From assembly GCF_031769215.1 (NCBI RefSeq), contig NW_026782195.1:1674001-1738000 (forward strand): a DNA stretch of 64,000 nucleotides, in the 5' to 3' direction. Shown in pieces: positions 8,587 to 55,459 of this stretch; the stretch's first letter is position 1, and the number at the start of each line of letters is the position of its first letter. The notes below the pieces were generated by a model. That model did no database searches. It saw only the letters and a program-made list of their open reading frames with translations, and was not told the origin of the DNA. Made by a program: the position numbers and the translations under genes. The DNA is from Ylistrum balloti (taxonomy: Eukaryota).

Positions 8587-9013
8587 ATGGCCGAAGCAGC
8601 CATAGAAACGGATATGGACGGCACTACAGTTGGGGACACTGTTACCCCCGATACAGACAAACAGGTCCACGAGAATTCGGAGTCGACCCACGACTCCCCC
8701 GCCCCACGGGATGAGGATCCAACCTCCATCCCTGACGACGACACACCTCCTCCTGAGATCATCTGGAGTGATAAGAAGTATGGTGTCGGGGATTTCACGG
8801 AGGAGTCAGGTCTCCTCCAGAAGGTGTGTCGATTTTCTGAAGTCCCTGGGAAGGGGAATTTGTCCCCAGGGTTGAAAATATACTCGGATCAGCCCGTGTG
8901 GCTACATAGTCGACACAAGAAACGCCACGCGAAGGCCCGGACTATTTACAAGGACAAGGACGGGGCCTATTTCGAGGTCGGACAAACTCTCCTTATACCG
9001 GACGACTTCCAAG
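8587..9013 (+). CDS. CABIT-domain protein A (GAREM/Themis family), coding exon 1
   Basis: Start gacATGG. Acidic N-terminus, then IIWSDKKY...EVGQTLLIPDDFQG. Donor AAG|GTAAAG at 9013/9014, phase 1. Confidence 0.88.
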
Positions 9014-9234
9014 GTAAAGTAGCCACGTGGTTTTTGGTATTGACAATGTGTATCACTTAGCACACATACACACACATAATTCATGTGTTTTGTTATGCTA
9101 GACAAATGCAAACAGCAATACGGTGTATGTTATCTGTACATAACTAGGTATTTAGACAGGGGTATTATATACCATGACGACCATGATGTTACTGGTGCAG
9201 TGTATTTCAATAAAATGTTTATTACAAAATCTAA

Positions 9235-10548
9235 CCCCTACATACTGATATGTTATCTGTCCCCTACATACAGATATGTTATCTCCCGTGTCCCCTACAT
9301 ACTGATATGTTATCTTTCCCCTACATACTGATATGTTATCTGTCCCCTACATACTGATATGTTATCTGTCCCCTACATACTGATATGTTATCTGTCCCCT
9401 ACATACTGATATGTTACCTCCCGTGTCCCCTACATACTGATATGTTATCTCCCGTGTCCCCTACATACTGATATGTTATCTCCCGTGTCCCCTACATACT
9501 GATATGTTATCTGTCCCCTACATACAGATATTATCTGTCCCCTACATACTGATATGTTATCTGTCCCCTACATACTGATATGTTATCTGTCCCCTACATA
9601 CAGATATTATCTGTCCCCTACATACTGATATGTTATCTGTCCCCTACATACTGATATGTTATCTGTCCCCTACATACTGATATCTGTCCCCTATATACTG
9701 ATATGTTATCTCCCGTGTCCCCTACATACTGACATGTTATCTGTCCCCTACATACAGATATATTATCTGTCCCCTACATACTGATATGTTATCTGTCCCC
9801 TACATACTGATATGTTATCTGTCCCCTACATACTGATATGTTATCTGTCCCCTACATACTGATATGTTATCTGTCCCCTACATACTGATATGTTATCTGT
9901 CCCCTACATACAGATGTGTTATCTCCCGTGTCCCCTACATACATATATGGTATCTGTCCCCTACATACTGATATGTTACCTGTCCCCTACATACTGATAT
10001 GTTATCTGTCCCCTACATACTGATATGTTATCTGTCCCCTACATACTGATATGTTACCTGTCCCCTACATGCTGATATGTTATCTGTCCCCTACATACTG
10101 ATATGTTATCTGTCCCCTACATACTGATATGTTATCTGTCCCCTACATACAGATATGTTACCTGTCCCCTACATACTGATACGTTATCTGTCCCCTACAT
10201 ACTGATATGTTATCTGTCCCCTACATACTGATGTGTTATCTGTCCCCTACATACTGATGTGTTATCTGTCCCCTACATACTGATATGTTATCTGTCCCCT
10301 ACATACTGACATAATACCTTTCCCCTACATACTGATATGTTATCTGTCCCCTACATACTGATATGTTATCTCCCGTGTCCCCTACATACTGATATGTTAT
10401 CTGTCCCCTTCATACTGATATGTTACCTGTCCCCTACATACTGATAAGGTATTTCCCGTGTCCCCTACATACTGATATGTTATCTGTCCCCTACATACTG
10501 ATATGTTATCTGTCCCCTACATACTGATATGTTATCTCCCGTTTCCCA
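9235..10548. repeat. 26-bp intronic minisatellite, ~50 copies
   Basis: Unit CCCCTACATACTGATATGTTATCTGT, with occasional CCCGT-insertion variants. Fills most of gene A's intron. Confidence 0.97.
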
Positions 10549-10842
10549 CCTTAATACTTGTATGTTATTCTATGACCCCGTCCTAAAATTATTGCGGGTG
10601 TTACCCTGAATGCCCCTACTGGTGGTCGACGGAATAAGGATAAACTCTCTGTCGCTATTTACAGAGATTCCGTGGCATCTTAAGCTTGTTGTGTTACCGG
10701 GGAAAAAACGATGATTAACAATATTTATCATAATTACGTAGTGACATTTTGTGTGCCAATGTGTTACCATAGCGTGTTTGTTAATGTTCTACGAATTACC
10801 TCCCTTAGTACAAAAAATTATTTTAACACCTTTGTTTTACAG

Positions 10843-11807
10843 GATGGTTTGAGCTGGTGCCCCCGGACTTCACCAGGGCGCGCTACTGTAAGGACATCGC
10901 TGAAGTTGCTAGTGTGATGCCAAAGAGAATTTTCACTCGGACGAGGTTGAAAGGAATTCGAATAGTTCAGGAAGGCGAGGAACAAAGCTATCTGGAGAGA
11001 AAGGTTTCCGCGGGATCCATCTTACGTGTTGAGGGTACTTTCTCAGCAAAGTGGAGAACGTCTGCAGAAACGGGCCTGATGAAAAAGAAAAGTAAAAACT
11101 GGACTACGGTCGAGGAACAATATCTAAAATGTTTAGACAAGGACGGAAAAGAGGTCATGATTCCATATAAACAAAAAGGTAAATTCAATATTATTTATGA
11201 GAAAGGATCGAAAGACAGTAGATGTATTTTACATATGAAGGATATAATTACGAATTTTTCTTTGCCGCTTAAAGTAAGACTGCTATTCGGAAAACCTCCC
11301 GTGAATCCATGTATTTTCACTGGAATGATGGTACTGAAAAGTCATACGCTGTGTGAAAGTATTGTGGGGAGCACAGCGTCAAACCGGCGTAACGTGTTGT
11401 TCGAGGTGCCTCTAGACTCGCCATGTGTTGTGGAGGTGGCAGAGAACGAGCGTGAGAGTTGTGGCCATCGGCGAGCGTACAAGGACGGTAAAAAACTGTG
11501 TCAACTGTATGCAACGTCATATTCATCACTTATCAAACTTTCACCGGATATGGACACCGACCAGCAGCTGTACCAGCACATCCCTACCGCCAAATCAAAG
11601 CGTGGAGCAGACGACAGTCTCCAGACACTTGATCTCATCACCAACATTAGTTTGACAGAAGAACCAGTTGACACATTCATACAGGAGTTTTCTGACACAG
11701 ATTCCATACAAAGTGCAGACCAGTCTAGCACCCCTGTCAAAGGCAGTCTAATGGAACTCAAGGAGATATCGGGAAATAGGTCACGTGATGATACCACGTT
11801 ATGCTAG
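10843..11807 (+). CDS. CABIT-domain protein A, coding exon 2 (spliced product 463 aa)
   Basis: Acceptor tttgttttacag|GA TGG TTT GAG (GWFELV). CABIT signature YLKCLDKDGKEVMIPYKQKGKF fits phi-x-C-x7-phi-x-(L/I)P-phi-x3-G-x-F. Also has LLFGKPPVNPCIFTG. Stop TAG at 11805-11807. Confidence 0.9.
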
Positions 11808-14800
11808 AAATGCATTTTCATGATTGAAGAATTGCACTAGTGTTCGCAGTGATACTGGTCCCTGATAAAGTAGATGTGTTTTTATAAATGTTAAAATTGA
11901 ACACGACCGCTTAAAGTTTTGCACGTGTAATTTTGTATAACACTTAGGGACCTAGTCATTTCTTGTTTAACGTATTGTAGTGGAATAGCCTTTCAGCAAC
12001 AAAACCTTAACTTCTGAATCATGACCTTCGGAAACGTGCTAACTTTATGACATTAATGGGTGTCGTGGAGAGGATTCCCATGAAGCTCGATTATATATAC
12101 AGTCACGTGCAGATCTTTTACAACGATTTACGTCCAAAGTGTTAGTCTCATATTTTGTGATAGTCATTTCTTAACTGTGAAATTTATTGACTTAATTTAA
12201 ATGTGTAAGTAAATTGATTTATTTATAAAATATGAGTTATTTTTGTGTATTTCTCTTCATCGTCCTGACTAGCTGCAGGTAAATCTCATTCGAAAATTTG
12301 CTGATCGTTAGATGATGGTATGTAGTTACAAAGAAATTATTACAGATAAATTATCTCCCGTTACGAATACATTACATTTCTTTTATGCTTTGATCTGCAT
12401 TTAATACGTCACAAAGTTAAGAACAGTTATACATTTTGAGAGGGATGGAGCAGTCGTAAAATTGATATAAACATATTCAACTTAGTTACCATTATTTTCG
12501 GTTATCCAGCTCATGGTAGCCTCTCTCTTATTTAAAATGTGTACAGACACCGTAATAATTTTGGTAATTTGTGTAAAACGCGTGTTGTCTTGCACTGCAC
12601 AGAATTGTATTTGTTCTACTGATAAAAAGTGTGGGTTTTAAATATTGGACCTTCAGCCAATCACGTACTTAATGAGCATAGACGTTATTGTTATTAAGGC
12701 TTTATATTGACAAGGGAAGTAACTCTATGCCAATATATATTGTCTCCTCTTCTAGAGAACTAGCATATCGACATAATGGCAGAAAAGGCTCTCCTGGAAG
12801 ATGACTGTTAGCTACTGTTGTAAATGGACATATTTGACGTTTCTCATACTTATTAAAATATTTCATACGTAGAAAAAAGTACTCCATTTAGCATGCATAC
12901 AAAATGTGGTCTCAGTGAATTTTTTTATTAAAAATGTGCAAATGCAACATGAAAAAATCGCTTTGTCCAGAATACATTCGAATTCTATCTCATAAATGCA
13001 ATCTCGAAACAGTTGAGTGCCTTTTCCAGACCTAGTTCACATGGTCATTTCTGTTTTTACGGGAGTACTGAACCATGACTTCAGTATTCAAAAAATAAGG
13101 TAACCATGAATTAAGCTACACGTGCCATCTATTGTTATCTTAATTGAGATTACCATTTGGGGATAAAATACCTTTGTGTCTGTTACTTCGTCGTGTTTTC
13201 TTACTAAATGATGACAAATCATGTGCTGAAATTCGAAAAGGTATCTCAAATTAAGCTAAGGCTTGTCTTGAAAAAAAATACTTGAATCACTGGAAATATC
13301 TGTGTTTCAAAGCATCATGTGCGATACATTCAGTATTCGGTCTTAGTTGCCTATGATGGGGCCAAGGGGACAATAGATTTGGCAGTAAAGAGACAATTTG
13401 TTTACGTTATTTGGATTCAAACTGCTCTCGTGGCAATTGTCAATTTTACTCATCAAAATGTATTTCACTTCCTGGAATCCAAATGCTACAAGTCTCACGA
13501 GGATATCATGTTAATAAACTGAAACCTGTATAGAAAGTATCCTGCCTACATGTGGTAATATCTCAGTGAGAGTGTCCCGTATGGTAATACATCTTGTTCT
13601 GTGACAACTTCCGATAGCTACAGCGTGGGCCACGTGTCTGAAGGTATCAGTTATATATTTACTGTGTGTATGGTATATCGGAAAACTATGAGGATGTAAA
13701 ACCGGCACCAATGAACCCACACCAAAGCCATATTTCTGACTGTTACACGATACATCACGCCAACCTGATTTGTGTTTTTTTGGTTTCTGTGTATCTAACA
13801 ATACAACGGGTACAAGTTTGAGAAACAGCTTCAGTTTTGTTTGGAAAACGATTTACAAATCATTAACATTACCATATGTTTGGTTTATAAATAGATCACT
13901 GCATTTAAAAAACAAACAAATTGTGTAAAACTTTATTTATTACGAAATACGTTTACGGTACAACGATCAGATAAACATTTCATTTCGTTTGCAAGATTTA
14001 CTCGCTGGAAACTGTCCTATTTTAAAAACTTTCGATATGTTAGTCAGCGCCGATTGGTAGTAAATATGCTGTCTTTCCAGATTCTTTGTAGAGTTTTTCT
14101 CAGTATTTTGCTGAAAAATAAGAGACGCATGACTTATCTCACTAGTCACCATATTTAATTGTATACTATTCATTTAAAGCTGACACTGCAAGTTAAAAAC
14201 ATAACGTGTTAAGATAGATAGAAATAAAAGTAGAACGCTTTCGAGACCTTCCCTCTATGTTACCGATAACTTCCGGTCAATGTATCTAAGGAAGTGGCAG
14301 ACATTTGAGTCTAAACGTTGCTTGGAAACGTATACGGGGTATCCGAGGGCACAAAAGGCCTGCGTTTTCAATATATTTCAATATCGACATAACGCGACTG
14401 CTAGGTACATCGCTTAAGATCATTTACTCGATTCCATTTTTTTTTCTTCCAAGTGACTGAATAACCTGGAAATTAACATTGAACACGTATCTATGACAAC
14501 CAGATACAATATTAGCCAAATAACAGAAATAAACATTTATATACGTTACGATTTACACACCTTGAGCCGTGCGTTCTGGAGGAAAAAATACACAACATAT
14601 TAACAAACGAATAACTTAGGCCAACTCTACCTTGTTTTTCTAGATTACTGGCATAAATTCCTGTGTAATAAGCTTTACTATTTAGAATTATTTTCTTCAG
14701 AAAAAAAAGAGTTCACTAGTGGAATTTTAGACAATCTACAACAGGTCACCGCTTTGCACGGGCTTTATTAGTCAAGCATTTACACAACCAAGATTGAGAA

Positions 14801-16959: not shown

Positions 16960-17345
16960 TGTTTTACATCATTTTAGGGATTATAAAGGGGACCGGGTAA
17001 GGTTTTACATCATTTGGGGACTCTAAAGGGGACTTGGTAAGGTTTTACATCATTTGGGGCAATAAAGGGGACCTGATAAGGCTTTACATCATTTGGGGAC
17101 TATAAAGGGGACCTGATAAGGCTTTACATCATTTGGGGACTATAAAGGGGACCGGGTAAGGTTTTACATCATTTGTGGGACAATAAAGGGGACCTGATAA
17201 GGCTTTACATCATTTGGGGACTATAAAGGGGACCTGATAAGGCTTTACATCATTTGGGGACTATAAAGGGGACCGGGTAAGGCTTTACATCATTTGGGGA
17301 CAATAAAGGGGACCTGATAAGGCTTTACATCATCGTCGGGACTAT
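16960..17345. repeat. 40-bp minisatellite, ~9-10 copies
   Basis: Unit GCTTTACATCATTTGGGGACTATAAAGGGGACCTGATAAG; period 40 (17081, 17121). Confidence 0.95.
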
Positions 17346-18685
17346 AATTCTCCACACATTTTTGGGTAGTGTATATGGTTCCTGTTTTGTGCTTTTAAGG
17401 GGGTTATATCTATTAAAACCAAATCTGTTAGACTCACAGAACATAACACTTAAATGTTGGAGATGAGGGAAGATACGAGAGAGTTTGGTGACGTACCACG
17501 TTCCCTCGGGGAAGGTTTGAGTAATGAGATTCTGCTGCAGTGGTCTTTTAAGATACGGGCGTACATTATCAAGTAGTGAAACCTTCTAAAAGCTTTATCT
17601 TTCTGGTACGTGCTGAACATTAATGACAAATTTAGTCTTTGTATCACGTAGTACACAACCTAAACGGTTATATAACATTAAAACACGAAGACCATGTACG
17701 GGATCTCAGAACTTCCTACGATCCATCATGATACATGTGCTAGTGGCGTTTTATTTAAAATGGACAGAAGACTGGACTATATTGAAAGTAAAACAGGAGG
17801 ATAAAGATTCAAATGAAATTTGATTTCCCAGCTTTTAAATCTGGCCCCAAGATATTGAGATTTAACACTGATATTATACCACACAATGCACATTTGTAGT
17901 AATGCTTAAGGGATATCGATAAAGCAATTTGTACTTTTTGATATCGCCCTTCAGGAAATATACAGAAATCGCACTAATCCTTTCGTCCCATCACGGCCGC
18001 TGGCGGTCCTGACTAACTCAATATGTGTTGTGTTGTTGTTTTTTTTTCTAACATATCCTTGTTTTACTGTAATGCATTTGCCTTTCGTGTTTTCGGTGTT
18101 AATGGTACGGTGCCTTTAATTGTTACTTAGTGTATGGATAAGGCAACGCACTCTTAATGACTATCCGATATCTTTAGTACAATCTTAAATGGAAGTACGC
18201 GAAATTTCTATTAACTGATTTGTGGTATAGAACCCAGAAATGGTGTAATCGATGAAATGAAAGTTTCTGTTTCCTTGGAAATAGAAATTTCTTAAATGCT
18301 ACATATGTTTTATACTCTCGAGATGTTTATTGAAATCAGATAAATCTTCGTATGGCCAAGCTGTGGTTAAAATGTCCATAGGAAGTAAAACATAGTGTGC
18401 ACTTAATGGCATTGGTCAATTTATTTTTATTTACATACGTACCAAAAACAATATACATTGAACACAGCTAACCATGACTACATTGCGACCGAACATTCGT
18501 TGAATAAAAGTTTTATCTTCATTGGAAATCGCCAGAAAGTCGTTGAGTTTGCAGACACTTGGCAATTACTTGTGGTACAGAATGCCAGGCGAAGTTAACA
18601 AGCGGTATTCCGTCTTATCGATCACGTGTTACATAATGTGTTCACATCGGTGTAATTACGCTAAATGGATTTTATCATTACACCC

Positions 18686-19440
18686 TCAATCTTTCCTCTT
18701 GCCTCTCTCCGTTTCTGACGACGTTTCAACGCTATAGTGATATCTAACCTTCATTTCAGTCATGTAATTTTCTGCCGTTTTCTGGAGGTGCGACAAGGTT
18801 TCGGCGTATAAGCCATTCATGCACAAATCGGTCGTGTTCAAAGCCTTTACGAAGAGAGGTACGTTCGCAACCGGAAGTTCGAGTAAACTTTTCTTCTCGT
18901 CCATTGTACATGCTACAATTGTGTGGTCTTTTATGACGTCATGAGTCTGTAGGACAGATGTGAAACTGCATGGTTTTGTGGGCGGCCGACCGTGAAGGAG
19001 TTTGATAAACACTCCTTTAGCCAGTCCTGCCGAAAGTAGATCATTGATACTGTACACATACGCAATATCATCAACATTGATGTGTTTTGATGTTGTCTTT
19101 CTCGCTTCTATCATGTAGAATAATCCCTCAGCGTCAAACGGAAGTAAAACCTCGGTATTGTCATCAGTAAAGCAACGCAAACAACGTAGTAACTTCCGGC
19201 GTGTCAACTTCCGGTAGTTGTTGTAACGTATAAAATCCTCATGGATGTTGATGACCCGGAGAATTCCTGGTTGAACCTCTACCCGTTGGTATAGTCCTTC
19301 AGGTTCACTTTCACATGGAGGTTCCTTCAGCACAAAGCCGGGTACAAATTTGGCTGACAGCATACGGACTGGCATAACTCTAGCGACACTGGCCACAGTC
19401 TTCATGGGCATTTCAAGGTCATCAATTAAACGGAACCAAC
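18686..19440 (-). CDS. CABIT-domain protein B, coding exon 2 (spliced product up to 370 aa)
   Basis: Acceptor catatttacag|GT TGG TTC (GWFRLIDD). CABIT signature LRCFTDDNTEVLLPFDAEGLF; also LLHGRPPTKPCSFT. Stop TGA at 18688-18686. Confidence 0.9.
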
Positions 19441-19591
19441 CTGTAAATATGGAGAAAACGTTTATGTTTTGAATAGTTACTTTCAACATTTTACTTAATA
19501 GAAAGTTTGTATATGTCAACAGGAACCGCAATGTACGGTCACGCTTTACTTAGATATATCAAATAGAATTTTACAATTCTTGAAACAAGGT

Positions 19592-19774
19592 TTTTTTCAA
19601 GTTTTATTTATCAATTTTATTGGCCTCGATGGGTGCGCGCGAGAGGTCTTACTGCGAAGAGAAACTGGAGTATCCAGAGAAAACCCACTTGGCACGCTGA
19701 TGACCTCATATCTTTTGGAGAATCGAACCAAAAACGTCTAGGTGAAAGGCGAGTGTGTTACCAACCCGCCATCT
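19592..19774 (-). mobile_element. tRNA-derived SINE (V-domain-like)
   Basis: Minus strand has an A-box-like TGGCGGGTTGG and a B-box GGTTCGATTC. The central GGGTTTTCTCTGGATACTCCAGTTTC resembles the V-SINE core GGGTTTTCTCCGGGTACTCCGGTTTC. A-rich tail. Confidence 0.75.
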
Positions 19775-20249
19775 AACCGCAATACTTAATGTATACAAAT
19801 ACATATTACAAGTGCGTGACACGTGTTAATGTAAAAAAAAACTACATCATCATGGTAATTGCACCAACACTTCGCGAATGTACATACAGTATTTGTCAAC
19901 AACTAATTTTGGCATGAGTAGCTAGTAGTCTTAATCAGATACTGGTATAACTTTGTACAGCTCCAAGTCCTTAATCGACGCGCACGTAATTATCCAGTCA
20001 CCCGCATATAAAGAAAATCAGTATTCTCTTGACAGAGTTCAGAATTTGTTGGTTTTAGTTGTACATTCTAAATACGTAACATATGTGGCGAACTTTGGTT
20101 CCAGTGACGTGCGTCACCCACGCTAATCTGCCAGAGTATAGAGATGTATGTAGAGTTAGCGATACAAATGACGGCAGCTTCAAAAATATCGCCCAGATCA
20201 TCTGATAGCGTCATCTTACCCATTCTCCGTTGTGCTTTTACAGCTCTCC

Positions 20250-20700
20250 CATCATCTTCCCATGTAGAGCCTCATTCACCATCCCCTTCAGTTCTCGAGC
20301 TATCATCCCCTGTAGCTCCTCTATCACAATCTCTCTTCACTGTATCACCCCTCCCTATAGCTCCTCATTATCATCCCCTCTAGTGCCTCTGTCACATCAT
20401 TCTGTAGAGCCCATATCGTAACCCTAAATAGAACCTTTGACACCGTGCCCTGTAGCGCCCCGTCCCCATCCCCTGCAGCGCCCCGTCATCGTCTTCGGAA
20501 CGGCCCCTATCACCATCCCTTATAGATCCCTTATGAACATTTCTTATAGCTTCCCCATCACCATATCCTGTAACTCCCCCATCACCATCCCCTGTAGCTT
20601 CCCAATAAAAATATCCTGTATCTCCCCCATCATCATCCCCTGTAGCGCCCCGTCATCGCCTTCCGAACCGCACCTATAGTGCCCCTATCACCGTTCCCGG
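20250..20700. repeat. Degenerate C-rich short-period repeat
   Basis: Recurrent ATCACCATCCCCTGTAGC(T/G)CCCC-like motifs. Confidence 0.7.
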
Positions 20701-21559
20701 TAGTATATGCCGCACAATACATCTGAAGTTATGATAGAATTCATAACTGGGTTGAACCGATTATTTTTCGCGGGTCGTCTCTTGGTATTCAAACAGTGTA
20801 CAGGTAGTTCGACATTCACGATTATCGTCACCAATTCCAGTGAATTCGATTCCCTTTTGTGACTTAGCGTCGACATTATGCTAATATGAAGAAAGATATT
20901 GCGCTTAGAACCCATGTAATGTTTTTAATAGAAATAAACTGAAACGAACGAGATCTTGATTTAGAGGCTTTGGCAATGAATGTCAGAATTGTTTTTTCTT
21001 ATATTCCCGAAGCAGTGAAATTATTCGATAATTGAAAACAAAGATACTACACTTGATCTGTTTTCTATCGATCAAACGATGTATAAAAAAGCACCACATT
21101 ACACTGATCCGTTCCGACAGAGAAGAAATAAGATAGTGGTTATATGGAGTTCTTTTAACCTTTTAATACTAAGGCGATTTTCTCTAATTATCACGATCTT
21201 CCACTTCAATCGATTTCCCACGAGCTTCGTCATAAAGGCAACAAGATCGATGCCTAGCTGTTTCTGGATGTTTGTCGTATGGGTATTACGGTTTTCTCAG
21301 ACCTTGAAGGCAGACCTTTTTGCCTTGTGCAAGGTGTATTTAAAGTCATCAAACGCTCGTTCGGAATTCCGCCCTGACGTTAAAGAATAAGCCAATCGAA
21401 CTTTGGTATTTCGGAAACAGACACCAAGCAGATGATTTTCTCAAAGACTCCCAGGTTAAGTTTAAGTGTCTTTAATAAACTTCGGTAACTAGTTTAAGTG
21501 GTAACTCATCATGTGGCCCTACTTTACAGACAACTAATTAACGGCATCTGTTACCGTAA

Positions 21560-21990
21560 TTTTACCTTTCGGTGGACAACTAGAAAAATGTACTTGACGA
21601 CAAAGTCTTACCATTTGGTGGACAACCTGAAAAATTTACTTATCAACCAAATATTACCTTTCAATGGACAACCAGAAAAATTACTTGTCAACAAAGTCTT
21701 ACCTTTCTGTGGACAACCTGAAAAATTTACATATCAACAAAGTCTTACCTTTCTGTGGACAACCTGAAAAAATAACTTATCAACCAAATCTTACCTTTCG
21801 ATGGACAACCAGAAAAAGGTACTTGTCAACAAAGTCTTACCTTTCTGTGGACAACCTGAAAAATTTACTTATCAACCAAGTCTTACCTTTCTGTGGACAA
21901 CCAGAAAAAAGGTTCCTATCAACAAAGTCTTAGCTTTCTGTCGAAACCGCAAAAACGGAACAGATCAATCAAGTCTTACTTTTCTGTGGG
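21560..21990. repeat. ~46-bp minisatellite, ~9 copies, inside gene B intron
   Basis: Unit AAAGTCTTACCTTTCTGTGGACAACCTGAAAAATTTACTTATCAAC; period 46 (21711, 21757). Confidence 0.92.
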
Positions 21991-23584
21991 CAAGCAACGA
22001 ACTTCTTCCTTTTTTTGTGAGCAAGCAATGAACTTAAATTTCCTAAGACAACCAAAAATAGGACTTACAAATCAAGTCTCACCTTTTCGAAGACAGCTAG
22101 AAACTACAGCTTATAAATTAAATCCGGGATTTTCTATGCAAAATTAGAAAAAAGATTTACCAAGTACTTTGGAAACCCATTTGGATAGATATTTAAGGAT
22201 GAAACAAAACCTGAACCAAAGGGCACTTCACATATTGGGTTCATACACATCAATGGAACTTTTTATCTTTTTTTCTCTATTTCTTAAAAAGTTTCATTAA
22301 TCAAAGTGCTATTTTTACGCAAAAAGGAAACAATAACAAATAAATATTTTATATTTACAGCGGTGTTCTTCCATTGGTACATTGATTTTAACATTCACTA
22401 ATCTGAGGCTGTGTTTTCAAATCTCTCGTGTGCCAGCCGCCGGTAAGAAACCCATTGCGGTATCAATGTAGAATGTTGGGCTCAGATTCATGAAAAGTAC
22501 TTTGTGTAAGAAAGCTGCGCACGTTTTCTTGGCGGAGGACTGGAAGATCAAATCATGTTTTTGAAAAAACACAATAATTTGAACAACATATAAAAACAGT
22601 GACTTTTTAAAATTTTTTTTTTAAATATTCCGCTATTTATGTTATCAAGATTGGCCCTCATTTGAATCCGCAGCTTCTTATTTCAATATATTTATATATA
22701 AAGTATGAAGAGTATGATTTCATTTGACATCTTATTGGCAAGTACACTTGAGTTTGTTTTAGTCACAAAGCGTTAGGCGCGGGCCTCTTCACTATTCATA
22801 CGCCATCCGCGTGTTTTTGTTTTCACACAAAGTTTCGACTTGCGCTAGGACCGAGAAAGCAGAGTAAGAGGACAATAAGTATTCACCTTCTTTAGAATGA
22901 GAGCGTGGTATCTCAACCTTCGTGTGGAGATCATTAAGTTGGCAAACACTCGGCAAGCCTCGGGTATTATTCTCAGCACCCATCGGCTGTAAAATTTATC
23001 GATATGCATGTACCATCATAAGAGTGAAAAGAAGGGCAGTAACTCTGGGATATCAGAATGTAAAAAGGGTGAAAGAATCTATTAGTCTTTATTTTTGGAG
23101 TCAACTTTCAAGCAAATGATTATGAACGGCCTAGAATGTACTATACTATTAAGGCTGTATGTACTTGTTTAAGTAAGATAGACCAGATTGTTGATGAAAT
23201 TACCAGGCTCGCTGGACCCGTGTTGCATAGTAATGAATGGCTTTCCGATACTTGTTAGTACAAGATACCCACATACTAAAGTACTGTGTGAATTGTCTCC
23301 TCCTGGTACACCAAGTATACCTAGCCAGTTGTAATAAATAAATCATGGAGACAATCACGTTTACAGTTGTACTAATTTAACACTGTAAATTGAGAATGTA
23401 CATCAAGTCGGAATTCAGTCAGGGAGGTGAACTCTGTCTGCGACACCTCCAGGTTTCGTTTACAAAGCTAGCGTTGTAAACATCAGGTTTTTATGGAGGC
23501 AAAATTTGTACATGTACATTCAGGATTGTGCTTATCTCTGAAATCAACTGTTTCACTTCATCACACCTTATCAACAATTTACTG

Positions 23585-23728
23585 CACTTAATAAGGAGTA
23601 CACTTGTCACTGAAAGCAGTATATGAACTTGATAAGAGGTGCGCTTGTCACTGAAAGCAGTACATGGACATATTAAGGAGTACACTGATCACTGAAAGCA
23701 GTACATGGACTTAATAAAGAGTACACTT
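23585..23728. repeat. 41-bp tandem repeat, ~3.5 copies
   Basis: CACTGAAAGCAGTA at 23608, 23649 and 23690. Confidence 0.85.
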
Positions 23729-25446
23729 ACCGCTGATCAAAATCATCAAGAAAATTCTTTCATGTGAATTATCGGATCTAAGTCGATCAGATGCCGTCCA
23801 CGGAAACCCTTGACAAAGGTCAAGGGTCATTGTAGAGAATAAAGAGCGTCATGTAATCACTGGTTTTACTACAGATAATTACATCGCTGGTCAGTAACTT
23901 GTGATAGGAATCGACCCTCGTTGACAGTTTTCTCTCGCCCATTATCGGACTGCAATCAACTTGGTTTTATTGTACAAATGTAACAAAAAATCAATGTAGC
24001 CGACTGGTGTGGCCCACTTAACACCTGACTGGTGTCCTAATTAAGACACATTGCACGGTATTCAGCTTTCCCTACCTCCCCTCGGGCAACAACTATCTGC
24101 TTGTTCATCAATGTCGACTCGTCCCCGTAGCTGTTATTCTAGAGCAGCGGTAGTCCACGAGAAACGCATTATTGATACAACATACGCCGAAAGTGATATC
24201 TATCAACCTCGTCTTCTCAAGCGTGTCTATGGGTACATAAAGGAAATATATAACTTGTCTACCCGATCGTAGATTAGATATTTGAGTGCCAATCAACCGA
24301 AAATTGACCTAATTCCACATGGTGTATTGATCAGCTGTTACCCCAAGAAACCAATAATATACTAGCGATATAGACTGGTGTGTTCCCGGTGGTGGGACTG
24401 TTTGTCAGGAGGGCGAGGAACAATATACAGATGTAGTTACGATAACTCAATATTGATTAACTGTTTACTCACAAACACAAACGATACACAAGAGAATCGT
24501 TATTCGTCGGAAGTATCTTTGGAAGACGGTGTTGCGTATTTTATTGAAAAGTAACGGATCCAGAGACCCGAGGGATGTTAAATGTTAGATTCCAGATTTC
24601 AACAATATTAAAAGTGCGAGAAGTACATGTAGTTTCGGAAGAATAATTGAACAAACTTTTATTAAGAAAGTCATGTTACCAAGAATTAGAGTACAGCAGA
24701 TGGGTATATGTTTATTTATTTCGTCCAGTTTGACGCATGGATAATGTTATTTACATCCTCTATCTAAATAATGTTGACGTTATTTGTTACTAGTCGCTTC
24801 TGACTGGCAAGTAAAGCGAGGTAGTGAGTTGTCACAGGAAAGAGTTCGTTAAAGAAAGTTGAAAACAATTTGTTTCCGACTGAATAAACTGTATTTATTT
24901 CCCGATAGTAGCGGACAGGAAAGACAGAAATGATGAACATACCATTACTGTTACCAGGAGATGCAGTAGGGCCACAGTTACCCTGACGAGAAGAATGACC
25001 AACATTACCTACGTAACCTATGAAAATGACAACAATTGTGACCCAGTGTACACCTTCTTTACCAAAGAATATTGAGCCAGTTGTAGCCATGTATTTACAT
25101 CCATCAATAATAATCAAAGTTAAGTCAGCCTTTACCTACATCTTAAAACTGACAAAAGCTATGGTCAAATATATATACATTTAGAACAAAACAACAATGA
25201 CAATGACAAAACGATTTGATATTTTTTTTAAAGATAACGACGGAAGTAACGGGTGTTCAATATTACTGTCCACAAGTCCGAATACGGGACGTCAGTTGTT
25301 ACCATTTCAGAAGGCTTTTAAAGATAATTTTTCGGTTAAAGTTGAAGGTTTTTACATAACTAAATAATAATGACACAACAATCACTGACGTCATGTTCTT
25401 GCGTCTATAATTCAGAGAAATAAAACAAATATGTAGTAGCATTAAT

Positions 25447-28400
25447 TTTTACCACTGACAGGTATAACAACAATCGATGTGTTTACCTTTACCACTGACA
25501 GGTATAACAACAAGTTGATGTCTTTACCTTTATCACTGACAGGTATAACAACAAGTTGATGTCCTTACCTTTATCACTGACAGGTATAACAACAATCGAT
25601 GTGTTTACCTTTATCACTGACAGGTATAACAACAATCGATGTGTTTACCTTTACCACTGACAGGTATAACAAGTTTATGTCTTTACCTTTATCACTGACA
25701 GGTATAACAACAATCGATGTCCCTACCTTTATCACTGACAGGTATAACAACAATCAATGTCCCTACCTTTATCACTGACAGGTATAACAACAAGTGATGT
25801 CCTTACCTTTATCACTGACAGGTATAACAACAATCGACGTCCTTCCCTTTATCACTGACAGGTATAACAACAATCGATGTGTTTACCTTTATCAGGTATA
25901 ACAACAATCGATGTGTTTACCTTTACCACTGACAGGTATAACAACAAGTTTATGTCTTTACCTTTATCACTGACAGGTATAACAACAAGTTTATGTCTTT
26001 ACCTTTATCACTGACAGGTATAACAACAATCGATGTCCCTACCTTTATCACTGACAGGTATAACAACAATCAATGTCCCTACCTTTATCACTGACAGGTA
26101 TAACAACAATCAATGTCCCTACCTTTATCACTGACAGGTATAACAACAATCAATGTCCCTACCTTTATCACTGACAGGTATAACAACAATCAATGTCCCT
26201 ACCTTTATCACTGACAGGTATAACAACAATCAATGTCCCTACCTTTATCACTGACAGGTATAACAACAAGTTTATGTCTTTACCTTTATCACTGACAGGT
26301 ATAACAACAATCGATGTCCCTACCTTTATCACTGACAGGTATAACAACAATCAATGTCCCTACCTTTATCACTGACAGGTATAACAACAATCAATGTCCC
26401 TACCTTTATCACTGACAGGTATAACAACAAGTGATGTCCTTACCTTTATCACTGACAGGTATAACAACAATCGACGTCCTTCCCTTTATCACTGACAGGT
26501 ATAACAACAATCGATGTGTTTACCTTTATCAGGTATAACAACAATCGATGTGTTTACCTTTACCACTGACAGGTATAACAACAAGTTTATGTCTTTACCT
26601 TTATCATTGACAGGTATAACAACAAGTTTATGTCTTTACCTTTATCACTGACAGGTATAACAACAATCGATGTCCCTACCTTTATCACTGACAGGTATAA
26701 CAACAATCGATGTGTTTACCTTTATCACTGACAGGTATAACAACAAGCGATATCCCTACCTTTATCACTGACAGGTATAACAATAATCAATGTCCCTACC
26801 TTTATCCCTATTATAACAACAATAGATATGTTTACCTTTATCACTGACAGGTATAACAACAATCGATGTATTTACCTTTATCACTGACAGGTATAACAAC
26901 AAGTGATGTCTTTACCTTTATCACTGACCAACAATCGATGTGTTTACCTTTATCGCTGACAGGTATAACAACAATCGATGTGTTTACCTTTATTACTGAC
27001 CAACAATTGATGTGTTTACCTTTATCACTGACAGGTATAACAACAATCGATGTCCTTACCTTTATCACTGTCAGGTATAACAACAAGCGATGTCTTTAAC
27101 TTTATCACTGACAGGTTTAACAACAATCGATGTACTTACCTTTATCACTGTCAGGTATAACAACAAGCGATGTCTTTAACTTTATCACTGACAGGTTTAA
27201 CAACAATCGATGTACTTACCTTTATCACTGTCAGGTATAACAACAAGTTTATGTCTTTACCTTTATCACTGACAGGTATAACAACAAGCGATGTACTTGC
27301 CTTTATCACTGACAGGTCTAACAACAATCGATGTTTCACCTTTATCACGGACAGGTATAACAACAAGCGATGTACTTACCTTTATCACGGACAGGTATAA
27401 CAACAAGCGATGTCTTTACCTTTATCACTGACAGGTGTAACAACAATCGATGTCTTCACCTTTATCACTGACAGGTATAACAACAAGTTTATGTCTTTAC
27501 CTTTATCACTGACAGGTATAACAACAAGCGATGTACTTACCTTTATCACTGACAGGTATAACAACAAGCGATGTCCCTACCTTTATCACTGACTGGTATA
27601 ACAACAATCAATGTCCCTACCTTTATCACTGACAGGTATAACAACAAGCGATGTCCCTACCTTTATCACTGACAGGTATAACAACAATCGATGTTCTCAC
27701 CTTTATCACTGACAGGTATTACAACAATCAATGTCCCTACCTTTATCATCGACAGGTATAACAACAAGTGATGTCCTTACCTTTATCACTGACTGGTATA
27801 ACAACAATCGATGTCCCTACCTTTATCACTGACAGGTATAACAACAAGCGATGTCCCTACCTTTATCACTGACAGGTATAACAACAAGTGATGTCTTTAC
27901 CTTTATCACTGACAGGTATAACAACAAGTAATGTCCTTACCTTTATCACTGACAGGTATAACAACAATCAATGTCCCTACCTTTATAACTGACAGGTATA
28001 ACAACAATCAATGTCCCTACCTTTATCACCGACAGGTATAACAACAAGTGATGTCCTTACCTTTATCACTGACTGGTATAACAACAATCGATGTCCCTAC
28101 CTTTATCACTGACAGGTATAACAACAAGCGATGTCCCTACCTTTATCACTGACAGGTATAACAACAAGTGATGTCTTTACCTTTATCACTGACAGGTATA
28201 ACAACAAGTTTATGTCTTTACCTTTATCACTGACAGGTATAACAACAATCGATGTCCCTACCTTTATCACTGACAGGTATAACAACAATCAATGTCCCTA
28301 CCTTTATCACTGACAGGTATAACAACAATCAATGTCCCTACCTTTATCACTGACAGGTATAACAACAATCAATGTCCCTACCTTTATCACTGACAGGTAT

Positions 28401-30465
28401 AACAACAATCAATGTCCCTACCTTTATCACTGACAGGTATAACAACAATCAATGTCCCTACCTTTATCACTGACAGGTATAACAACAAGTTTATGTCTTT
28501 ACCTTTATCACTGACAGGTATAACAACAATCGATGTCCCTACCTTTATCACTGACAGGTATAACAACAATCAATGTCCCTACCTTTATCACTGACAGGTA
28601 TAACAACAATCAATGTCCCTACCTTTATCACTGACAGGTATAACAACAAGTGATGTCCTTACCTTTATCACTGACAGGTATAACAACAATCGACGTCCTT
28701 CCCTTTATCACTGACAGGTATAACAACAATCGATGTGTTTACCTTTATCAGGTATAACAACAATCGATGTGTTTACCTTTACCACTGACAGGTATAACAA
28801 CAAGTTTATGTCTTTACCTTTATCATTGACAGGTATAACAACAAGTTTATGTCTTTACCTTTATCACTGACAGGTATAACAACAATCGATGTCCCTACCT
28901 TTATCACTGACAGGTATAACAACAATCGATGTGTTTACCTTTATCACTGACAGGTATAACAACAAGCGATATCCCTACCTTTATCACTGACAGGTATAAC
29001 AATAATCAATGTCCCTACCTTTATCCCTATTATAACAACAATAGATATGTTTACCTTTATCACTGACAGGTATAACAACAATCGATGTATTTACCTTTAT
29101 CACTGACAGGTATAACAACAAGTGATGTCTTTACCTTTATCACTGACCAACAATCGATGTGTTTACCTTTATCGCTGACAGGTATAACAACAATCGATGT
29201 GTTTACCTTTATTACTGACCAACAATTGATGTGTTTACCTTTATCACTGACAGGTATAACAACAATCGATGTCCTTACCTTTATCACTGTCAGGTATAAC
29301 AACAAGCGATGTCTTTAACTTTATCACTGACAGGTTTAACAACAATCGATGTACTTACCTTTATCACTGTCAGGTATAACAACAAGCGATGTCTTTAACT
29401 TTATCACTGACAGGTTTAACAACAATCGATGTACTTACCTTTATCACTGTCAGGTATAACAACAAGTTTATGTCTTTACCTTTATCACTGACAGGTATAA
29501 CAACAAGCGATGTACTTGCCTTTATCACTGACAGGTCTAACAACAATCGATGTTTCACCTTTATCACGGACAGGTATAACAACAAGCGATGTACTTACCT
29601 TTATCACGGACAGGTATAACAACAAGCGATGTCTTTACCTTTATCACTGACAGGTGTAACAACAATCGATGTCTTCACCTTTATCACTGACAGGTATAAC
29701 AACAAGTTTATGTCTTTACCTTTATCACTGACAGGTATAACAACAAGCGATGTACTTACCTTTATCACTGACAGGTATAACAACAAGCGATGTCCCTACC
29801 TTTATCACTGACTGGTATAACAACAATCAATGTCCCTACCTTTATCACTGACAGGTATAACAACAAGCGATGTCCCTACCTTTATCACTGACAGGTATAA
29901 CAACAATCGATGTTCTCACCTTTATCACTGACAGGTATTACAACAATCAATGTCCCTACCTTTATCACCGACAGGTATAACAACAAGTGATGTCCTTACC
30001 TTTATCACTGACTGGTATAACAACAATCGATGTCCCTACCTTTATCACTGACAGGTATAACAACAAGCGATGTCCCTACCTTTATCACTGACAGGTATAA
30101 CAACAAGTGATGTCTTTACCTTTATCACTGACAGGTATAACAACAAGTAATGTCCTTACCTTTATCACTGACAGGTATAACAACAATCAATGTCCCTACC
30201 TTTATAACTGACAGGTATAACAACAATCAATGTCCCTACCTTTATCACCGACAGGTATAACAACAAGTGATGTCCTTACCTTTATCACTGACTGGTATAA
30301 CAACAATCGATGTCCCTACCTTTATCACTGACAGGTATAACAACAAGCGATGTCCCTACCTTTATCACTGACAGGTATAACAACAAGTGATGTCTTTACC
30401 TTTATCACTGACAGGTATAACAACAAGTGATGTCCTTACCTTTATAACTGACAGGTATAACAACG
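25447..30465 (-). repeat. ~40-bp minisatellite (~125 copies) made of gene B exon-1 end plus its splice donor
   Basis: Minus-strand unit ATTGTTGTTATACCTGTCAGTGATAAAG|GTAAGGACATCG. The first copy is the real exon end ATC GTT GTT ATA CCT GTC AGT TAT AAA G|GTAAGG. Confidence 0.97.
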
Positions 30466-30797
30466 ATTGGTGTTTTGTCCTTACACGGAGCACCTGCTAA
30501 TACATCGACGGAAGTGACGTTTTTGGCGTAAACTTTCCTGCCCCTCATCTCTTTATACACAACGAGGGGTTTATGTATATCGTTAGCGCCCTCCAAACTA
30601 GCCAATAACCGGTTCTCTTGCCAAACCTTGACCACTGTTGGCAGACTGTTCTCGTCTAGAATATCCTTCATGGTCTGAGGCTGGTCACTCCAGACGATCG
30701 GGAGGTTGCCGGACATGGCTCCCTGGAGCACGGACTCCGGGTCCATGGCTGTGTCCGTGGAATGTGGCGAAGAGGACTGTGGTAGGGATGTCAACAT
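30440..30797 (-). CDS. CABIT-domain protein B, coding exon 1
   Basis: MLTS...(alternative start gccATGG at 30746)...IVWSDQPQTMKDILDENSLPTVVKV...PIVVIPVSYKG. Donor AAG|GTAAGG at 30440/30439, phase 1, the same position as in genes A and C. Confidence 0.87.
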
Positions 30798-33700
30798 AGT
30801 GTTAGTATCAGCTGTCTATCCTCAGATACACACCAATAACGTGTCAGATCAATATCCCGGTACACTGTGAATCATACAGCCCAACCGTTCATTCATGTTA
30901 CCACAACTAGTTCCTTCCCGGCCTATTTATATTTAAAGAGCAATTTTTCAATAGTCTAGTCTCATATTTGGCATGTTGTTTCCATGTATGTGTTCGTCAC
31001 GATGATACCGCGCGGTGGCTGTACGTTGATTCTATAACACTCGCATGGAGTAAGTCAGAGCCAACGTAAAGGTCTTTTGAAATCCTCCGAAATTCTTCCC
31101 TTATATTGCCCTCGTTTGAATATTCAGATCCGAGACCTTTAAAACTTATAACAGCATTGATCACATGAGACGCTATGCAATGTAAATATACATGACGATC
31201 ACGGGTGAGAAAGTGTTCTTAAGTTACCTCGGTCTATAGAACACACGAAAACGCTATAGCAGTTCATATAATATGATCAATAACCGCGCAGGAAGCCAGT
31301 AGGAATACGCCACTACGGGTGTATTAAGTGTGTAGTAAAACCTAATTTGATATCCGTACAACGTTCGAGGCTGGAACAGTAAGCGAGAATTCTACAAAAA
31401 TTACAAAGTATTCCCCAGAGCGTGCCACGACTTCAGATTGTCTTAATGTGACGTTCAACACCAATCTCAATCCAGCTTCAATGTAGAAGGACGATGTGAC
31501 ACTTTTTGAAGTGAATGTAATATTCTGTAATTTGTCTCGGGTTACCCTTTCAGTGATTCGCGCCGAGTACGTTACGATTGTGTAGATATATACATAATCC
31601 CGCTTCCGTTTAACCAAGTCGTTGCCTTTTTAATATCAGTTTTTTTCTTTCTCCACAGAATAATGTACAGCTTCCATCAACTAACGATACACTAATTCCT
31701 TTTTACACTTCGGTTTACTCAGCACATCTCACTAATGGAATGTTACCATATTTAGTTATTTAACACACATTAAAAACATCGAGGCTTTTAAACATCTAGT
31801 AAAGTTACATCAGCTCAAAATTTATCATACTCCAGTATCGATTCGTCAAAGTAGGCTTTTACACAAGTTAAAACTGCGCCCGGTGTCCCGTAAACTGTTT
31901 TCAATCTACCCATTAAAACATCTGTATAAATCCAGGGTTATATATTAACCGACGTGACTATAACCTCATGAACATAATTGCAGTTCCGTCTATCCTAATC
32001 CTTAAAACGTTTCAATGTGTCAGGAGTAATTACACGCTTGGAATGATAGAAACCTACGCATGCCACGCCACCTACCGGTAATTTCTCACGACAGTTGTAC
32101 CCTCGTCCCTTGGGTGTGACAGTAGGGTAGCTTCCGCTATTTGACTACATATGTTGGTCGTGTTGTGACGTCACGGACCCTGCCTAGGGGGCCTACGTCG
32201 AGTCGTTAAAATGAAGTGATAAGATGTATACTTGACCTTTTCAACTTAATTGTGATGGAATGTCCGATTCCGTATCGTCGTGGTCAATTTCATCTGTCAA
32301 TCTAGATGTTGTGGCCTATTTTGCACTCGGTACAGTAAGGTACCCGATCATTGAACCCAAAATTCCGACATCGAACTTTGACGTCTAGACTTTATTTCTA
32401 AGTAGGAAGGTCATGTATAGAATAACATTTAATCCGATGTTTCGTGGCGTGTCGATGATAATAGGTATATAATTATGTAAGGACCCCCAAATTCGTTCCA
32501 GAGGACACAATGGATATCGTGAAACACACGGACAGCTTTACCAGATTTCAGCTGGATTTGATTTGATTTAATACCATCGCAGTGCAGGGAATACTAATAT
32601 GTTAAAATCCTCCCACAACACAGCTCCATAAACACATTCTCCAAATTGCTTTGTTACCGCTTTGCTAGTATTGTTCACTCGGATCTAATTTATTTTAGTT
32701 TTCTTTTCCCAAACACTGGTTGAGATGAAATATAGTTTGTATTTTTTAAGAAAGCATATACTTCATTATATATAAAAATCCATGTTGTTGGCGCGGCCTG
32801 TGAATCTTTGAGTATGGAAGCTTCAGATATTTTCAGATACTATTGTCACAGCAAGTGATCGAGTGTCCAAGGTCAGTGATAATTCACTTCTACCTCGAGT
32901 GTTGAAACTGCTGTTGATGTCGTCTATTTTAACCTTTTAACCGGTTACTTTAGTAAGGGTGTGTTGTAAAGTGCTGATAAACGATAACGTTAGAGGCAGT
33001 AAAACCGTATTTGTCTAACTGATATGTAAACACCGAAACTACCCGAGCAGTTACTGTGTGTCCTGTTTGTTCTATTTGTTACAAAAGTACCGAGATAAGA
33101 TTTTGCAGCCATTGTATTCAATATATGTTTACTACAACAGCGCGTCTAAATCATTTAACGTTATCCAACCATTCGTGATCTGTCCATACTTGATGTCTCC
33201 ATGTTACGATTGTACTCAGATAAATCTATATTCTTTGTCGCCATCTTTCTTGGAACTATCGGTACGTGGCGTGACCACCCAGAACCTCGGTGTCTCGGTG
33301 GCACTCTGATCTGTCAATTTTTGTTGTCTCATTCTCCGCCAATGTTTGACGTTTACACGGGGGATATTTTTCGATGGCGTCTTGTAATCTTCAATGTACC
33401 ATGGCGATTTCATTGATGCGAACACCATCAGGTCGGGTTTTCAAAACATTTAAGTATTTTACATATACCTTACTATTGAAAAGAATTAATACCATGTCTC
33501 TAAGCTCATTTTAAAATCCACAATATTTGGTGCAATCTGATAAGGATTTTTCCTCCTTCCGCGTGAAACAGACCCAAACCCACACGTACATATTGCTGGG
33601 TCAATACACATATAGAGTATATGGTCCAAAAGAGCGAAATTGCTGTTCCTTCGTCAGAGGTCCTGTTTTACCCACAATTGTAAAGGCAGGTCAATTATTC

Positions 33701-55137: not shown

Positions 55138-55459
55138 ATGCATCCGTGTAAGGACCAATCTGACCTTCCAGATCATCATAATGATGTGATTCCGAAACCT
55201 AATCTGGAGTTCGAAGATGGCACTCACTCAATTTTTATGATAATTCAGAAATTTCCTTTCCCCGTGGTTGTTCTGTGCGATACAACCAGGTGTCCGATTC
55301 CTGTGGACAGGTCGCGATTCAACTTTGATTTGTCGCAACCTCTGTTGTTCTACCGTAAGAGGAGTATTCAGAAGATTCCGGCCAGATCTGTGTACGTGGA
55401 CGACACTGACCAATACCAGGAGGCTGGTGACCCCCTACTCATCCCAGAGGACTACAAAG
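55138..55459 (+). CDS. CABIT-domain protein C (GAREM-like adaptor), coding exon 1
   Basis: MHPCK...QKFPFPVVVLCD...QPLLFYRKRSIQKIPARSVY...EAGDPLLIPEDYKG. Donor AAG|GTACGT at 55459/55460, phase 1. Confidence 0.87.

What the first reader, a model, noticed from the sequence alone, without database searches (positions are those of the whole stretch)
25447..30465. Splice-donor amplification: ~125 tandem copies of gene B's own exon end and 5' splice site
Seen: the ~40-bp unit is the last 28 nt of coding exon 1 (IVVIPVS[Y/D]K-G) plus the first 12 nt of the intron. The exon runs straight into a 5-kb series of AAG|GT donors: GTAAGG, GTAAAG, GTAGGG, GTAAAC, and at least 8 perfect-consensus GTAAGT (e.g. 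~27139, 27219, 27379, 27540 and their +2219 copies), which match the consensus better than the real GTAAGG donor. In the exon frame the first repeat reads GKDITCCYTCQ-TGA (stop 30407-30405), upstream of the second donor at 30399. Every donor except the first therefore gives a premature stop. Inference: a copy-number-variable decoy or poison donor array that could tune gene B dose through NMD, soak up U1 snRNP, or provide AG|GT ratchet points. It is also a live case of the tandem-duplication route to intron and exon remodelling.
Basis: partly seen in the sequence, partly recalled or inferred. Interest (0 to 1): 0.88.

Follow-up and report, generated by a model that had tools for sequence, protein, structure and literature searches.

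The report
Splice-donor minisatellite in scallop CABIT gene
A 5-kb tandem repeat in the first intron of a scallop gene is built from about 126 copies of the preceding exon's last 27 bases plus its splice donor; repeats of this kind are already known from amphioxus and human genes and are not known to disturb splicing, so this is an unusually large and old example, not a new mechanism.

Summary
Window 25448-30464 is a 40-bp minisatellite of 126.6 copies on the minus strand. Its first unit is the end of coding exon 1 plus the authentic donor (AAG|GTAAGG, exon ends at 30440) of a two-exon CABIT-domain gene. GT survives in 117 of 126 units; 12 pseudo-donors equal the real one and 8 are AAG|GTAAGT. 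Any downstream donor includes the in-frame TGA at 30407-30405.

New here: Mizuhopecten yessoensis has a homologous 48-bp, 78-copy array at the same intron position, although dS between the two genes is about 1. An outgroup scallop shows no array in the first 370 bp of its intron. A 2219-bp block of the array is duplicated with one mismatch, so only about 70 units are independent.

The functional reading (poison-donor rheostat, U1 sponge, ratchet points) has no support. The donor positions are the most variable part of the unit. A non-junction array in the neighbouring gene is also shared between the species. In published cases (human F7, IFI6, CBS; amphioxus "mirages") the pseudo-sites are silent or only the two nearest are used.

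The scan has noted many similar junction-seeded arrays elsewhere in this genome. Verdict: a new, very large member of a known kind.

The parts
30440..30797 (-). ATG at 30797 by homology with the M. yessoensis model; the exon ends in phase 1 after ...IVVIPVSYK-G.
   Evidence: ORF; tblastn with P0001 residues 1-120, 92.5% identity; protein alignment.
30434..30442 (-). Authentic 5' splice site AAG|GTAAGG (last exon base 30440, GT at 30439-30438).
   Evidence: Sequence. 7/9 match to CAG|GTAAGT and U1 duplex -10.0 kcal/mol. Joining it to 19440 restores the conserved SYKG|WF.
25448..30464 (-). 40-bp minisatellite, 126.6 copies. Each unit is the exon end (about 27 nt) plus the intron start (about 13 nt). 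117 units keep GT.
30405..30407 (-). First in-frame stop (TGA) if the authentic donor is skipped.
   Evidence: ORF 30405..30797.
29754..29762 (-). Nearest AAG|GTAAGT pseudo-donor, 680 nt downstream of the real donor. It is one of 8; the G of GT lies at 29759, 29598, 29438, 29358, 27540, 27379, 27219 and 27139.
   Evidence: 8/9 match, -12.0 kcal/mol.
25952..28209 (-). Copy 1 of a 2219-bp higher-order tandem duplication inside the array.
   Evidence: Autocorrelation and exact run analysis: one mismatch, at 27749.
28171..30428 (-). Copy 2 of the 2219-bp duplication. It ends 10 nt short of the GT of the real donor.
25345..25425 (-). Degenerate unit just beyond the distal end of the array. It is of the M. 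yessoensis type and contains ACATGACGTCAG.
   Evidence: Sequence; alignment A2.
19441..30439 (-). Intron 1 (10,999 nt). It is collinear with the M. yessoensis intron.
   Evidence: Acceptor ttacag|GT at 19440; blastn collinearity.
18686..19440 (-). Coding exon 2 (CABIT domain core) including the stop codon.
   Evidence: Pfam PF12736, E 6.3e-8, 32.8 bits against a cut-off of 24; 96% identity to P0001.
21562..21993 (-). Second minisatellite in the same intron (46 bp, 9.4 copies). Its sense strand also carries AAG|GTAAGA. Its relation to the junction array is unproven.
   Evidence: Alignment test p about 0.05, resting only on a shared 9-mer. No counterpart in M. yessoensis.

Best explanation
This is a junction-spanning ("mirage"-type) intronic minisatellite.

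Origin. A short tandem duplication copied the last ~27 nt of exon 1 and the first 13-18 nt of intron 1 of a CABIT-domain gene. This happened before the window species and Mizuhopecten yessoensis diverged.

Growth. Because the extra copies lay on the intron side, the exon and its first donor stayed intact and the duplication was tolerated. Unequal exchange or replication slippage then expanded and reshuffled the array separately in each lineage. The window species now has 40-bp units and the other scallop has 48-49-bp units. Nested higher-order duplications, including a near-perfect 2219-bp block, are traces of this turnover.

Splicing (inferred). The gene is most likely spliced from the first, most upstream donor to the acceptor at 19440. 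The >100 pseudo-donors are silent or give only minor unproductive products.

The array is best seen as a nearly neutral by-product of a minisatellite-rich genome, not an evolved regulator.

Shown: structure, origin from the exon, orthology of the arrays, lack of extra conservation at the donor positions. Inferred: which donor is used and selective neutrality.
For: - Array and unit anatomy.
- The exon end is an ancestral, conserved coding motif across bivalve orders, so the repeat derives from the exon and not the reverse.
- The M. yessoensis locus L001 is collinear with the window. It holds a homologous 48/49-bp array of 77.7 copies at 10475-14243, 118 nt after the donor GT. A degenerate unit lies directly at the exon edge.
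- The window keeps a relic unit of the M. yessoensis type at its distal edge.
- dS between the orthologues is 0.97 and dN/dS is 0.028.
- An outgroup scallop contig shows no array in 370 bp of intron.
- Nested duplications are typical of unequal exchange.
- Minisatellites cover 24% of the window in 15 arrays.
- Donor positions are the most variable part of the unit.
- The neighbouring gene's non-junction array is also shared between the species.
- Published precedents: human F7, LMNB2 and PDGF use only the authentic donor, and IFI6 and CBS add only the two nearest pseudo-sites (PMC1557585). Amphioxus mirages do not disturb splicing (PMC3087553; PMC3902484).
Against: - No transcript data for either scallop could be examined, so silence of the pseudo-donors is extrapolated from vertebrate and amphioxus cases with 5-26 copies.
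- Eight pseudo-donors match the consensus better than the real site. In F7 minigenes, perfect-consensus pseudo-sites did compete.
- The unit consensus is about 80% alike between species despite dS near 1 (my count from the consensus units and alignment A2). This could hint at constraint. It is also expected if a many-copy consensus preserves the ancestral unit.
- Another follow-up in this scan reports that such arrays are unusually frequent and favour donors in this genome. That would call for something beyond random seeding.
Confidence: 0.75

Rival explanations
1. One reading: the array is an evolved, copy-number-variable set of decoy or poison donors. It would lower or tune productive mRNA through premature stops and NMD, or act as a local sink for U1 snRNP.
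For: - 117 GT sites, of which 12 equal the real donor and 8 are stronger.
- All downstream donors include the TGA at 30407-30405.
- The array is retained at the same site in two genera with dS about 1.
- CBS and IFI6 do use proximal pseudo-sites.
Against: - The donor hexamer is the least conserved part of the unit in the window array.
- The proximal copy in M. yessoensis has no GT, and the second donor in the window species is the weak GTAAAG.
- A non-donor array nearby is equally persistent.
- F7 experiments show upstream-first selection, with pseudo-sites silent up to a consensus value of 91.
- U1 is very abundant, so about 100 sites on one pre-mRNA cannot titrate it (general knowledge).
- There are no RNA data.
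Confidence: 0.1
2. The array is a cis-regulatory element of another sort. It could be a promoter-proximal run of U1 sites that supports elongation and suppresses premature polyadenylation. Alternatively it could be a transcription-factor site array acting as an intronic enhancer.
For: - The array lies directly after the first coding exon.
- The M. yessoensis units carry 43 perfect TGACGTCA palindromes, against 1 in the rest of the 36-kb locus.
- The window units carry ATCGAT 40 times.
Against: - The two species do not share the candidate site. TGACGTCA occurs 0 times in the window array.
- The CpG-containing core is visibly decaying to TG in many units.
- There is no expression or binding evidence.
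Confidence: 0.06
3. Assembly artefact: all or part of the array is over-expanded by the assembler.
For: A 2258-bp stretch recurs at a lag of 2219 bp with a single mismatch. That is unusual in an array whose units otherwise differ by about 12%.
Against: An independent assembly of another genus has a 3.8-kb homologous array at the same site. Unit variants form a coherent nested pattern. At most the extra 2.2 kb is in doubt.
Confidence: 0.05

Closest known systems
Human F7 intron 7 minisatellite (37 bp, 5-9 copies), Borensztajn et al. 2006, PMC1557585
   Same: The first monomer spans the exon-intron boundary, so the authentic donor is followed by reiterated pseudo-donors. The array is a length-variable minisatellite.
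   Different: F7 has 5-9 copies with only 4 nt of exon per unit, and its pseudo-sites are identical to the real donor. Here there are about 126 copies with about 27 nt of exon per unit, and the pseudo-sites have diversified: some are stronger and most are weaker. Splicing has been tested for F7 and not here.
Human IFI6 (6-16) intron 2 and CBS intron 13 junction minisatellites, as summarised in PMC1557585
   Same: The donor is reiterated 15-25 times, and use of downstream copies changes the transcript.
   Different: In those genes the two nearest pseudo-sites are used constitutively. Here usage is unknown. A stop lies in the first unit, so any use would be unproductive.
Amphioxus "mirages" (Adh3, troponin C, globins BflGb6/9, PGBD5), PMC3087553 and PMC3902484
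   Same: Minisatellite-like tandem duplications of exon-intron boundaries in an invertebrate. They are recurrent across genes, length-unstable, show concerted evolution, and are reported not to disturb splicing. They have been proposed as a route to new introns.
   Different: Mirages have a few to some tens of units of 10-160 bp. No orthologous array conserved between genera at dS near 1 was described in the papers read. I found no report from molluscs in the held library.
Recursive splice sites (ratchet points), from general knowledge
   Same: AG|GT occurs in every unit.
   Different: A ratchet point needs a pyrimidine tract and AG placed directly against GT. Here the tract ends at an earlier AG (TCAG), 8 nt upstream. 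The intron is only 11 kb.

Membership tests
Junction-spanning (mirage / F7-type) minisatellite | Head-to-tail array with a minisatellite-size unit | tested here: met
   40 bp, 126.6 copies, 88% matches.
Junction-spanning (mirage / F7-type) minisatellite | The terminal unit contains a genuine exon-intron boundary | tested here: met
   Exon confirmed by the CABIT hit and by orthologues. The junction SYKG|WF is conserved. The exon end matches the unit 30-mer with 2 mismatches.
Junction-spanning (mirage / F7-type) minisatellite | The splice signal is reiterated in the intronic units | tested here: met
   117 of 126 units keep GT at the homologous position.
Junction-spanning (mirage / F7-type) minisatellite | Normal splicing from the authentic site is retained | not testable with these tools
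   No RNA data. The only indirect evidence is that the annotated M. yessoensis protein and distant orthologues join the first donor to exon 2.
Junction-spanning (mirage / F7-type) minisatellite | Length instability or polymorphism | not testable with these tools
   Only one haplotype was available. Nested and near-identical duplications suggest recent turnover.
Regulated unproductive splicing (poison splice sites coupled to NMD) | The alternative sites are conserved beyond neutral expectation | tested here: not met
   The donor hexamer is the most variable part of the unit. The proximal copy lacks GT in M. yessoensis. A non-junction array is equally persistent.
Regulated unproductive splicing (poison splice sites coupled to NMD) | The alternative isoform carries a premature stop | tested here: met
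   TGA at 30407-30405 lies in the exon frame. It is only 5 and 45 nt from junctions 2 and 3.
Regulated unproductive splicing (poison splice sites coupled to NMD) | The alternative isoform is observed and responds to NMD block | not testable with these tools
   No transcript data. A protein search with the read-through ORF found only a genomic contig of another species.
Recursive splice site | A 3' splice site (pyrimidine tract plus AG) placed directly against GT | tested here: not met
   The unit reads ...TTGTTGTTATACCTGTCAG TGATAAAG|GT. The first AG after the tract is 8 nt upstream of the AG|GT.
CABIT-domain protein (host gene) | Pfam PF12736 above the gathering score | tested here: met
   32.8 bits against a cut-off of 24, E 6.3e-8 on exon 2. 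Homologues carry PF12736.

The most novel reading that the evidence does not exclude
Junction-seeded arrays may not be random in this scallop. A splice-site-linked duplication process, or selection for promoter-proximal U1-site arrays, would create and maintain them. The CABIT-gene array has been kept at the same site in two genera separated by dS near 1. It would then be a maintained cis-element in which more than 100 competing donors set the yield of productive mRNA, with copy number acting as a heritable dose control.
Probability: 0.1. Interest if true: 0.75.

Novelty: new member of a known kind. Interest (0 to 1): 0.42.

Why it matters
This array is about five to twenty times larger than the vertebrate cases on which the upstream-first model of 5' splice-site choice was built. 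It holds 117 GT sites in 5 kb, 20 of them as strong as or stronger than the real donor.

It also has an orthologous, independently evolved counterpart in another genus. That gives a natural test of whether upstream-first donor selection holds at this scale and in a mollusc.

Together with the other scan notes, it suggests that mirage-type repeats, so far described in amphioxus, are common in scallop genomes. If so, they would contribute to intron growth and remodelling there. They would also complicate gene prediction and assembly at exon-intron junctions.

Tried and rejected
- Other arrays copied from their own gene's junction: the 26-bp array of gene A, the 34-bp arrays in gene C's intron, the 40-bp array at 16963 and the 46-bp array at 21562 were each tested by local alignment against shuffles. 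None was significant. The best scores were p about 0.05, resting on a shared 9-10-mer.
- Rfam scan of 17000-33000: no family found.
- Pfam on exon 1 alone: no significant hit. Its identity rests on alignment to full-length CABIT proteins.
- Search for transcripts or ORFs reading from exon 1 into the array: one hit only, a genomic contig of another scallop.
- Copies of the unit elsewhere in the window: none.
- My first segmentation of the M. yessoensis array was noisy. I replaced it with a segmentation-free 6-mer profile.
- Two attempts at dS used wrong exon coordinates.
- A words look-up in the scan notes failed or returned nothing.
- Whole-array assembly artefact: rejected, because an independent assembly of another genus has the array.
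Full report
**Observation.** Tandem Repeats Finder reports one array at 25448-30464 with period 40, 126.6 copies and 88% matches.

Read on the minus strand, the array starts inside an open reading frame. That frame ends ...PIVVIPVSYK-G, followed by GTAAGG. Anchoring on the junction 19-mer gives 127 sites: the real junction plus 126 repeats.

The spacing between sites is 40 bp in 94 cases and 41 bp in 17. A few units are shortened. A 30-mer of the unit occurs 116 times at up to 3 mismatches, against 0 expected by chance. All copies lie in the array, and the last one is the exon end itself with 2 mismatches.

The donor 9-mers are as follows:

| 9-mer | Count | Note |
|---|---|---|
| AAGGTAGGG | 46 | |
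| AAGGTAAAG | 23 | |
| AAGGTAAAC | 19 | |
| AAGGTAAGG | 13 | includes the real donor |
| AAGGTAAGT | 8 | |
| GTGAx, shifted by one base | 6 | |
| AAGGTAAAT | 2 | |
| no GT | 9 | |
| truncated terminal unit (AAAAATTAA) | 1 | also without GT |

By pairing to the U1 5' end, the real site scores -10.0 kcal/mol and the eight GTAAGT sites score -12.0. The GTAAAx sites score -6.8. The nearest GTAAGT lies 680 nt downstream of the real donor.

The exon frame continues GKDITCCYTCQ and stops at TGA 30407-30405.

**Host gene.** Exon 2 runs from 19440 to 18686, after the acceptor ttacag|GT. It hits Pfam CABIT above the gathering score.

The closest protein is Mizuhopecten yessoensis LOC110448781, 368 aa and 96% identical. 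The window therefore comes from another pectinid scallop.

Aligning exon 1 and exon 2 to full-length CABIT proteins shows that the junction motif is conserved. It reads PIVVIPVSYKG|WF in the window, PIVVIPLGYAGWF in Mytilus and PVVVMPAGYKGWF in Pinctada. The exon end is thus ancestral coding sequence, and the repeat was copied from it.

Two paralogous CABIT genes in the window have an intron at the same phase-1 position: gene A at 8700-9014 and 10836-11579, and gene C at 55138-55460 and 61600 onward. Their intronic arrays are not derived from their own junctions.

**Internal structure of the array.** The units form nested higher-order repeats. A 7-unit pattern is repeated next to the exon, and blocks of about 640 bp recur.

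In addition, 25952-28209 equals 28171-30428 with a single mismatch. This is a tandem duplication of 2219 bp that reaches to within 10 nt of the real donor's GT. That is either a very recent event or an assembler over-expansion. Without it the array would be 2.8 kb, or about 70 units.

**Orthologue.** The M. yessoensis locus L001 (GCA_002113885.2) is collinear with the window across the promoter, exon 1, two intron patches and exon 2.

Its exon 1 ends AAAG|GTAAGA. The next 47 nt are a degenerate copy of the unit whose donor position reads AAAAG|TCGGG. After a 65-nt spacer comes a 48/49-bp array of 77.7 copies at 10475-14243.

The two arrays align to each other, and the consensus units share GTAAGGACAT and TGTTGT-ATACCTGTC. 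The M. yessoensis unit has an extra segment containing GACGTCA. A degenerate unit of that type sits just beyond the distal end of the window array. The 40-bp unit is therefore probably a shortened derivative that was homogenised in the window lineage.

The M. yessoensis units keep ATACCTGTC, as in the window exon, whereas its own exon now reads ATTCCCGTC. The array thus preserves older synonymous states of the exon.

dS between the orthologues is 0.97 and dN/dS is 0.028.

A third scallop is equidistant from both species and therefore an outgroup (Logan SRR27895283). It has the same exon end but no array in the 370 bp of intron on its contig. The array therefore probably arose after that split and before the split of the window species from Mizuhopecten. 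The caveat is that the contig is short.

**Tests bearing on function.**
- A segmentation-free profile shows which part of the unit is conserved. After removing one copy of the 2219-bp block, the exon-derived part of the window unit is retained in 70-90% of units. The consensus donor hexamer and the following intron-derived bases are retained in only 10-40%.
- In M. yessoensis the best-kept parts are the GACGTCAA segment and GTAAGG. The two species show no common pattern of constraint on the donor.
- The pseudo-donor nearest the exon is weak in the window species (GTAAAG) and absent in M. yessoensis. [quoted passage not shown] With two species this is only a hint.
- As a control for persistence, gene A's 26-bp intronic array (9235-10537) is not junction-derived. 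It also matches a 32-bp array at the orthologous place in L001, at 74% identity and E 7e-11. Long-lived arrays are therefore not special to donor-bearing repeats.
- Other arrays in gene B's intron are lineage-specific.
- No Rfam family was found in the region.

**Background rate.** Fifteen minisatellites cover 24% of this window. If arrays were seeded at random, about 0.9% of splice junctions would lie in the terminal unit of an array that extends into the intron.

Extrapolated to a whole scallop genome, that gives hundreds to thousands of cases. This is my own rough inference, and it assumes this window is typical.

The scan's notes list many donor- and acceptor-seeded arrays in the same genome. 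Another follow-up (s1-258768) judged them unusually frequent and biased toward donors. I could not test that claim here.

**What is known.** Minisatellites whose first unit spans an exon-intron boundary are described in human F7, IFI6 (6-16), CBS, LMNB2 and PDGF (PMC1557585).
- In F7 only the most upstream donor is used.
- F7 pseudo-sites with a consensus value up to 91 stay silent. Only perfect-consensus sites compete, and even then the upstream site is still used.

In amphioxus the same structures are called mirages. They occur in several genes and at both donor and acceptor sides. They show concerted evolution and length instability, and they do not disturb splicing. They have been proposed as a source of new introns (PMC3087553; PMC3902484). 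I found no report for molluscs in the held library.

**Verdict.** The structural interpretation is supported, and I extend it with an orthologous array in a second genus.

The regulatory interpretation is not supported by any test available here, and the experimental precedents argue against it. It is not excluded, because no RNA data exist for this locus and because eight pseudo-donors match the consensus better than the real site.

I file the array as a new, exceptionally large and old member of the mirage / F7-type class. Interest is moderate.

Noticed in passing
window 1-64000: Fifteen minisatellite arrays with units of 24-54 bp cover 24% of the window (16% without the focal array). This genome is extremely rich in minisatellites.
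   Followed up: partly
L001:10475-14243: The M. yessoensis units carry 43 perfect TGACGTCA palindromes (the cAMP-response-element sequence), against 1 in the rest of the 36-kb locus. The window array has none, but carries ATCGAT 40 times.
   Followed up: partly
window 9235-10537 and L001:35533-35745: The 26-bp array in the intron of the neighbouring CABIT gene A matches a 32-bp array at the orthologous place in M. yessoensis (74% identity, E 7e-11). This is a second minisatellite shared by the two genera, again with a changed unit length.
   Followed up: partly
window 21562-21993; L001:15190-16848: Further arrays deeper in the same intron carry donor-like A(A/T)GGTAA on the sense strand in both species, but they do not align with each other or with the junction array. 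They could be older, displaced junction arrays; this is unproven.
   Followed up: partly
window 8700-9014, 30440-30797, 55138-55460: All three CABIT paralogues in the window end their first coding exon in phase 1 right after the motif IP-x-x-[YF]-x-G. The intron position is therefore conserved among paralogues.
   Followed up: partly
window 25448-30464 (minus strand): Each unit also contains an acceptor-like stretch (a pyrimidine-rich tract ending TCAG) 8 nt before its donor. The array therefore offers many potential pseudo-exons of 8 + 40n nt, all of them frame-disrupting.
   Followed up: no
   Followed up: no
window 56247-58232: Two adjoining 34-bp arrays in gene C's first intron contain AAAGGTCCGTGAG on the sense strand. 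Similarity to gene C's own donor (AAAG|GTACGT) is marginal (p about 0.06).
   Followed up: yes
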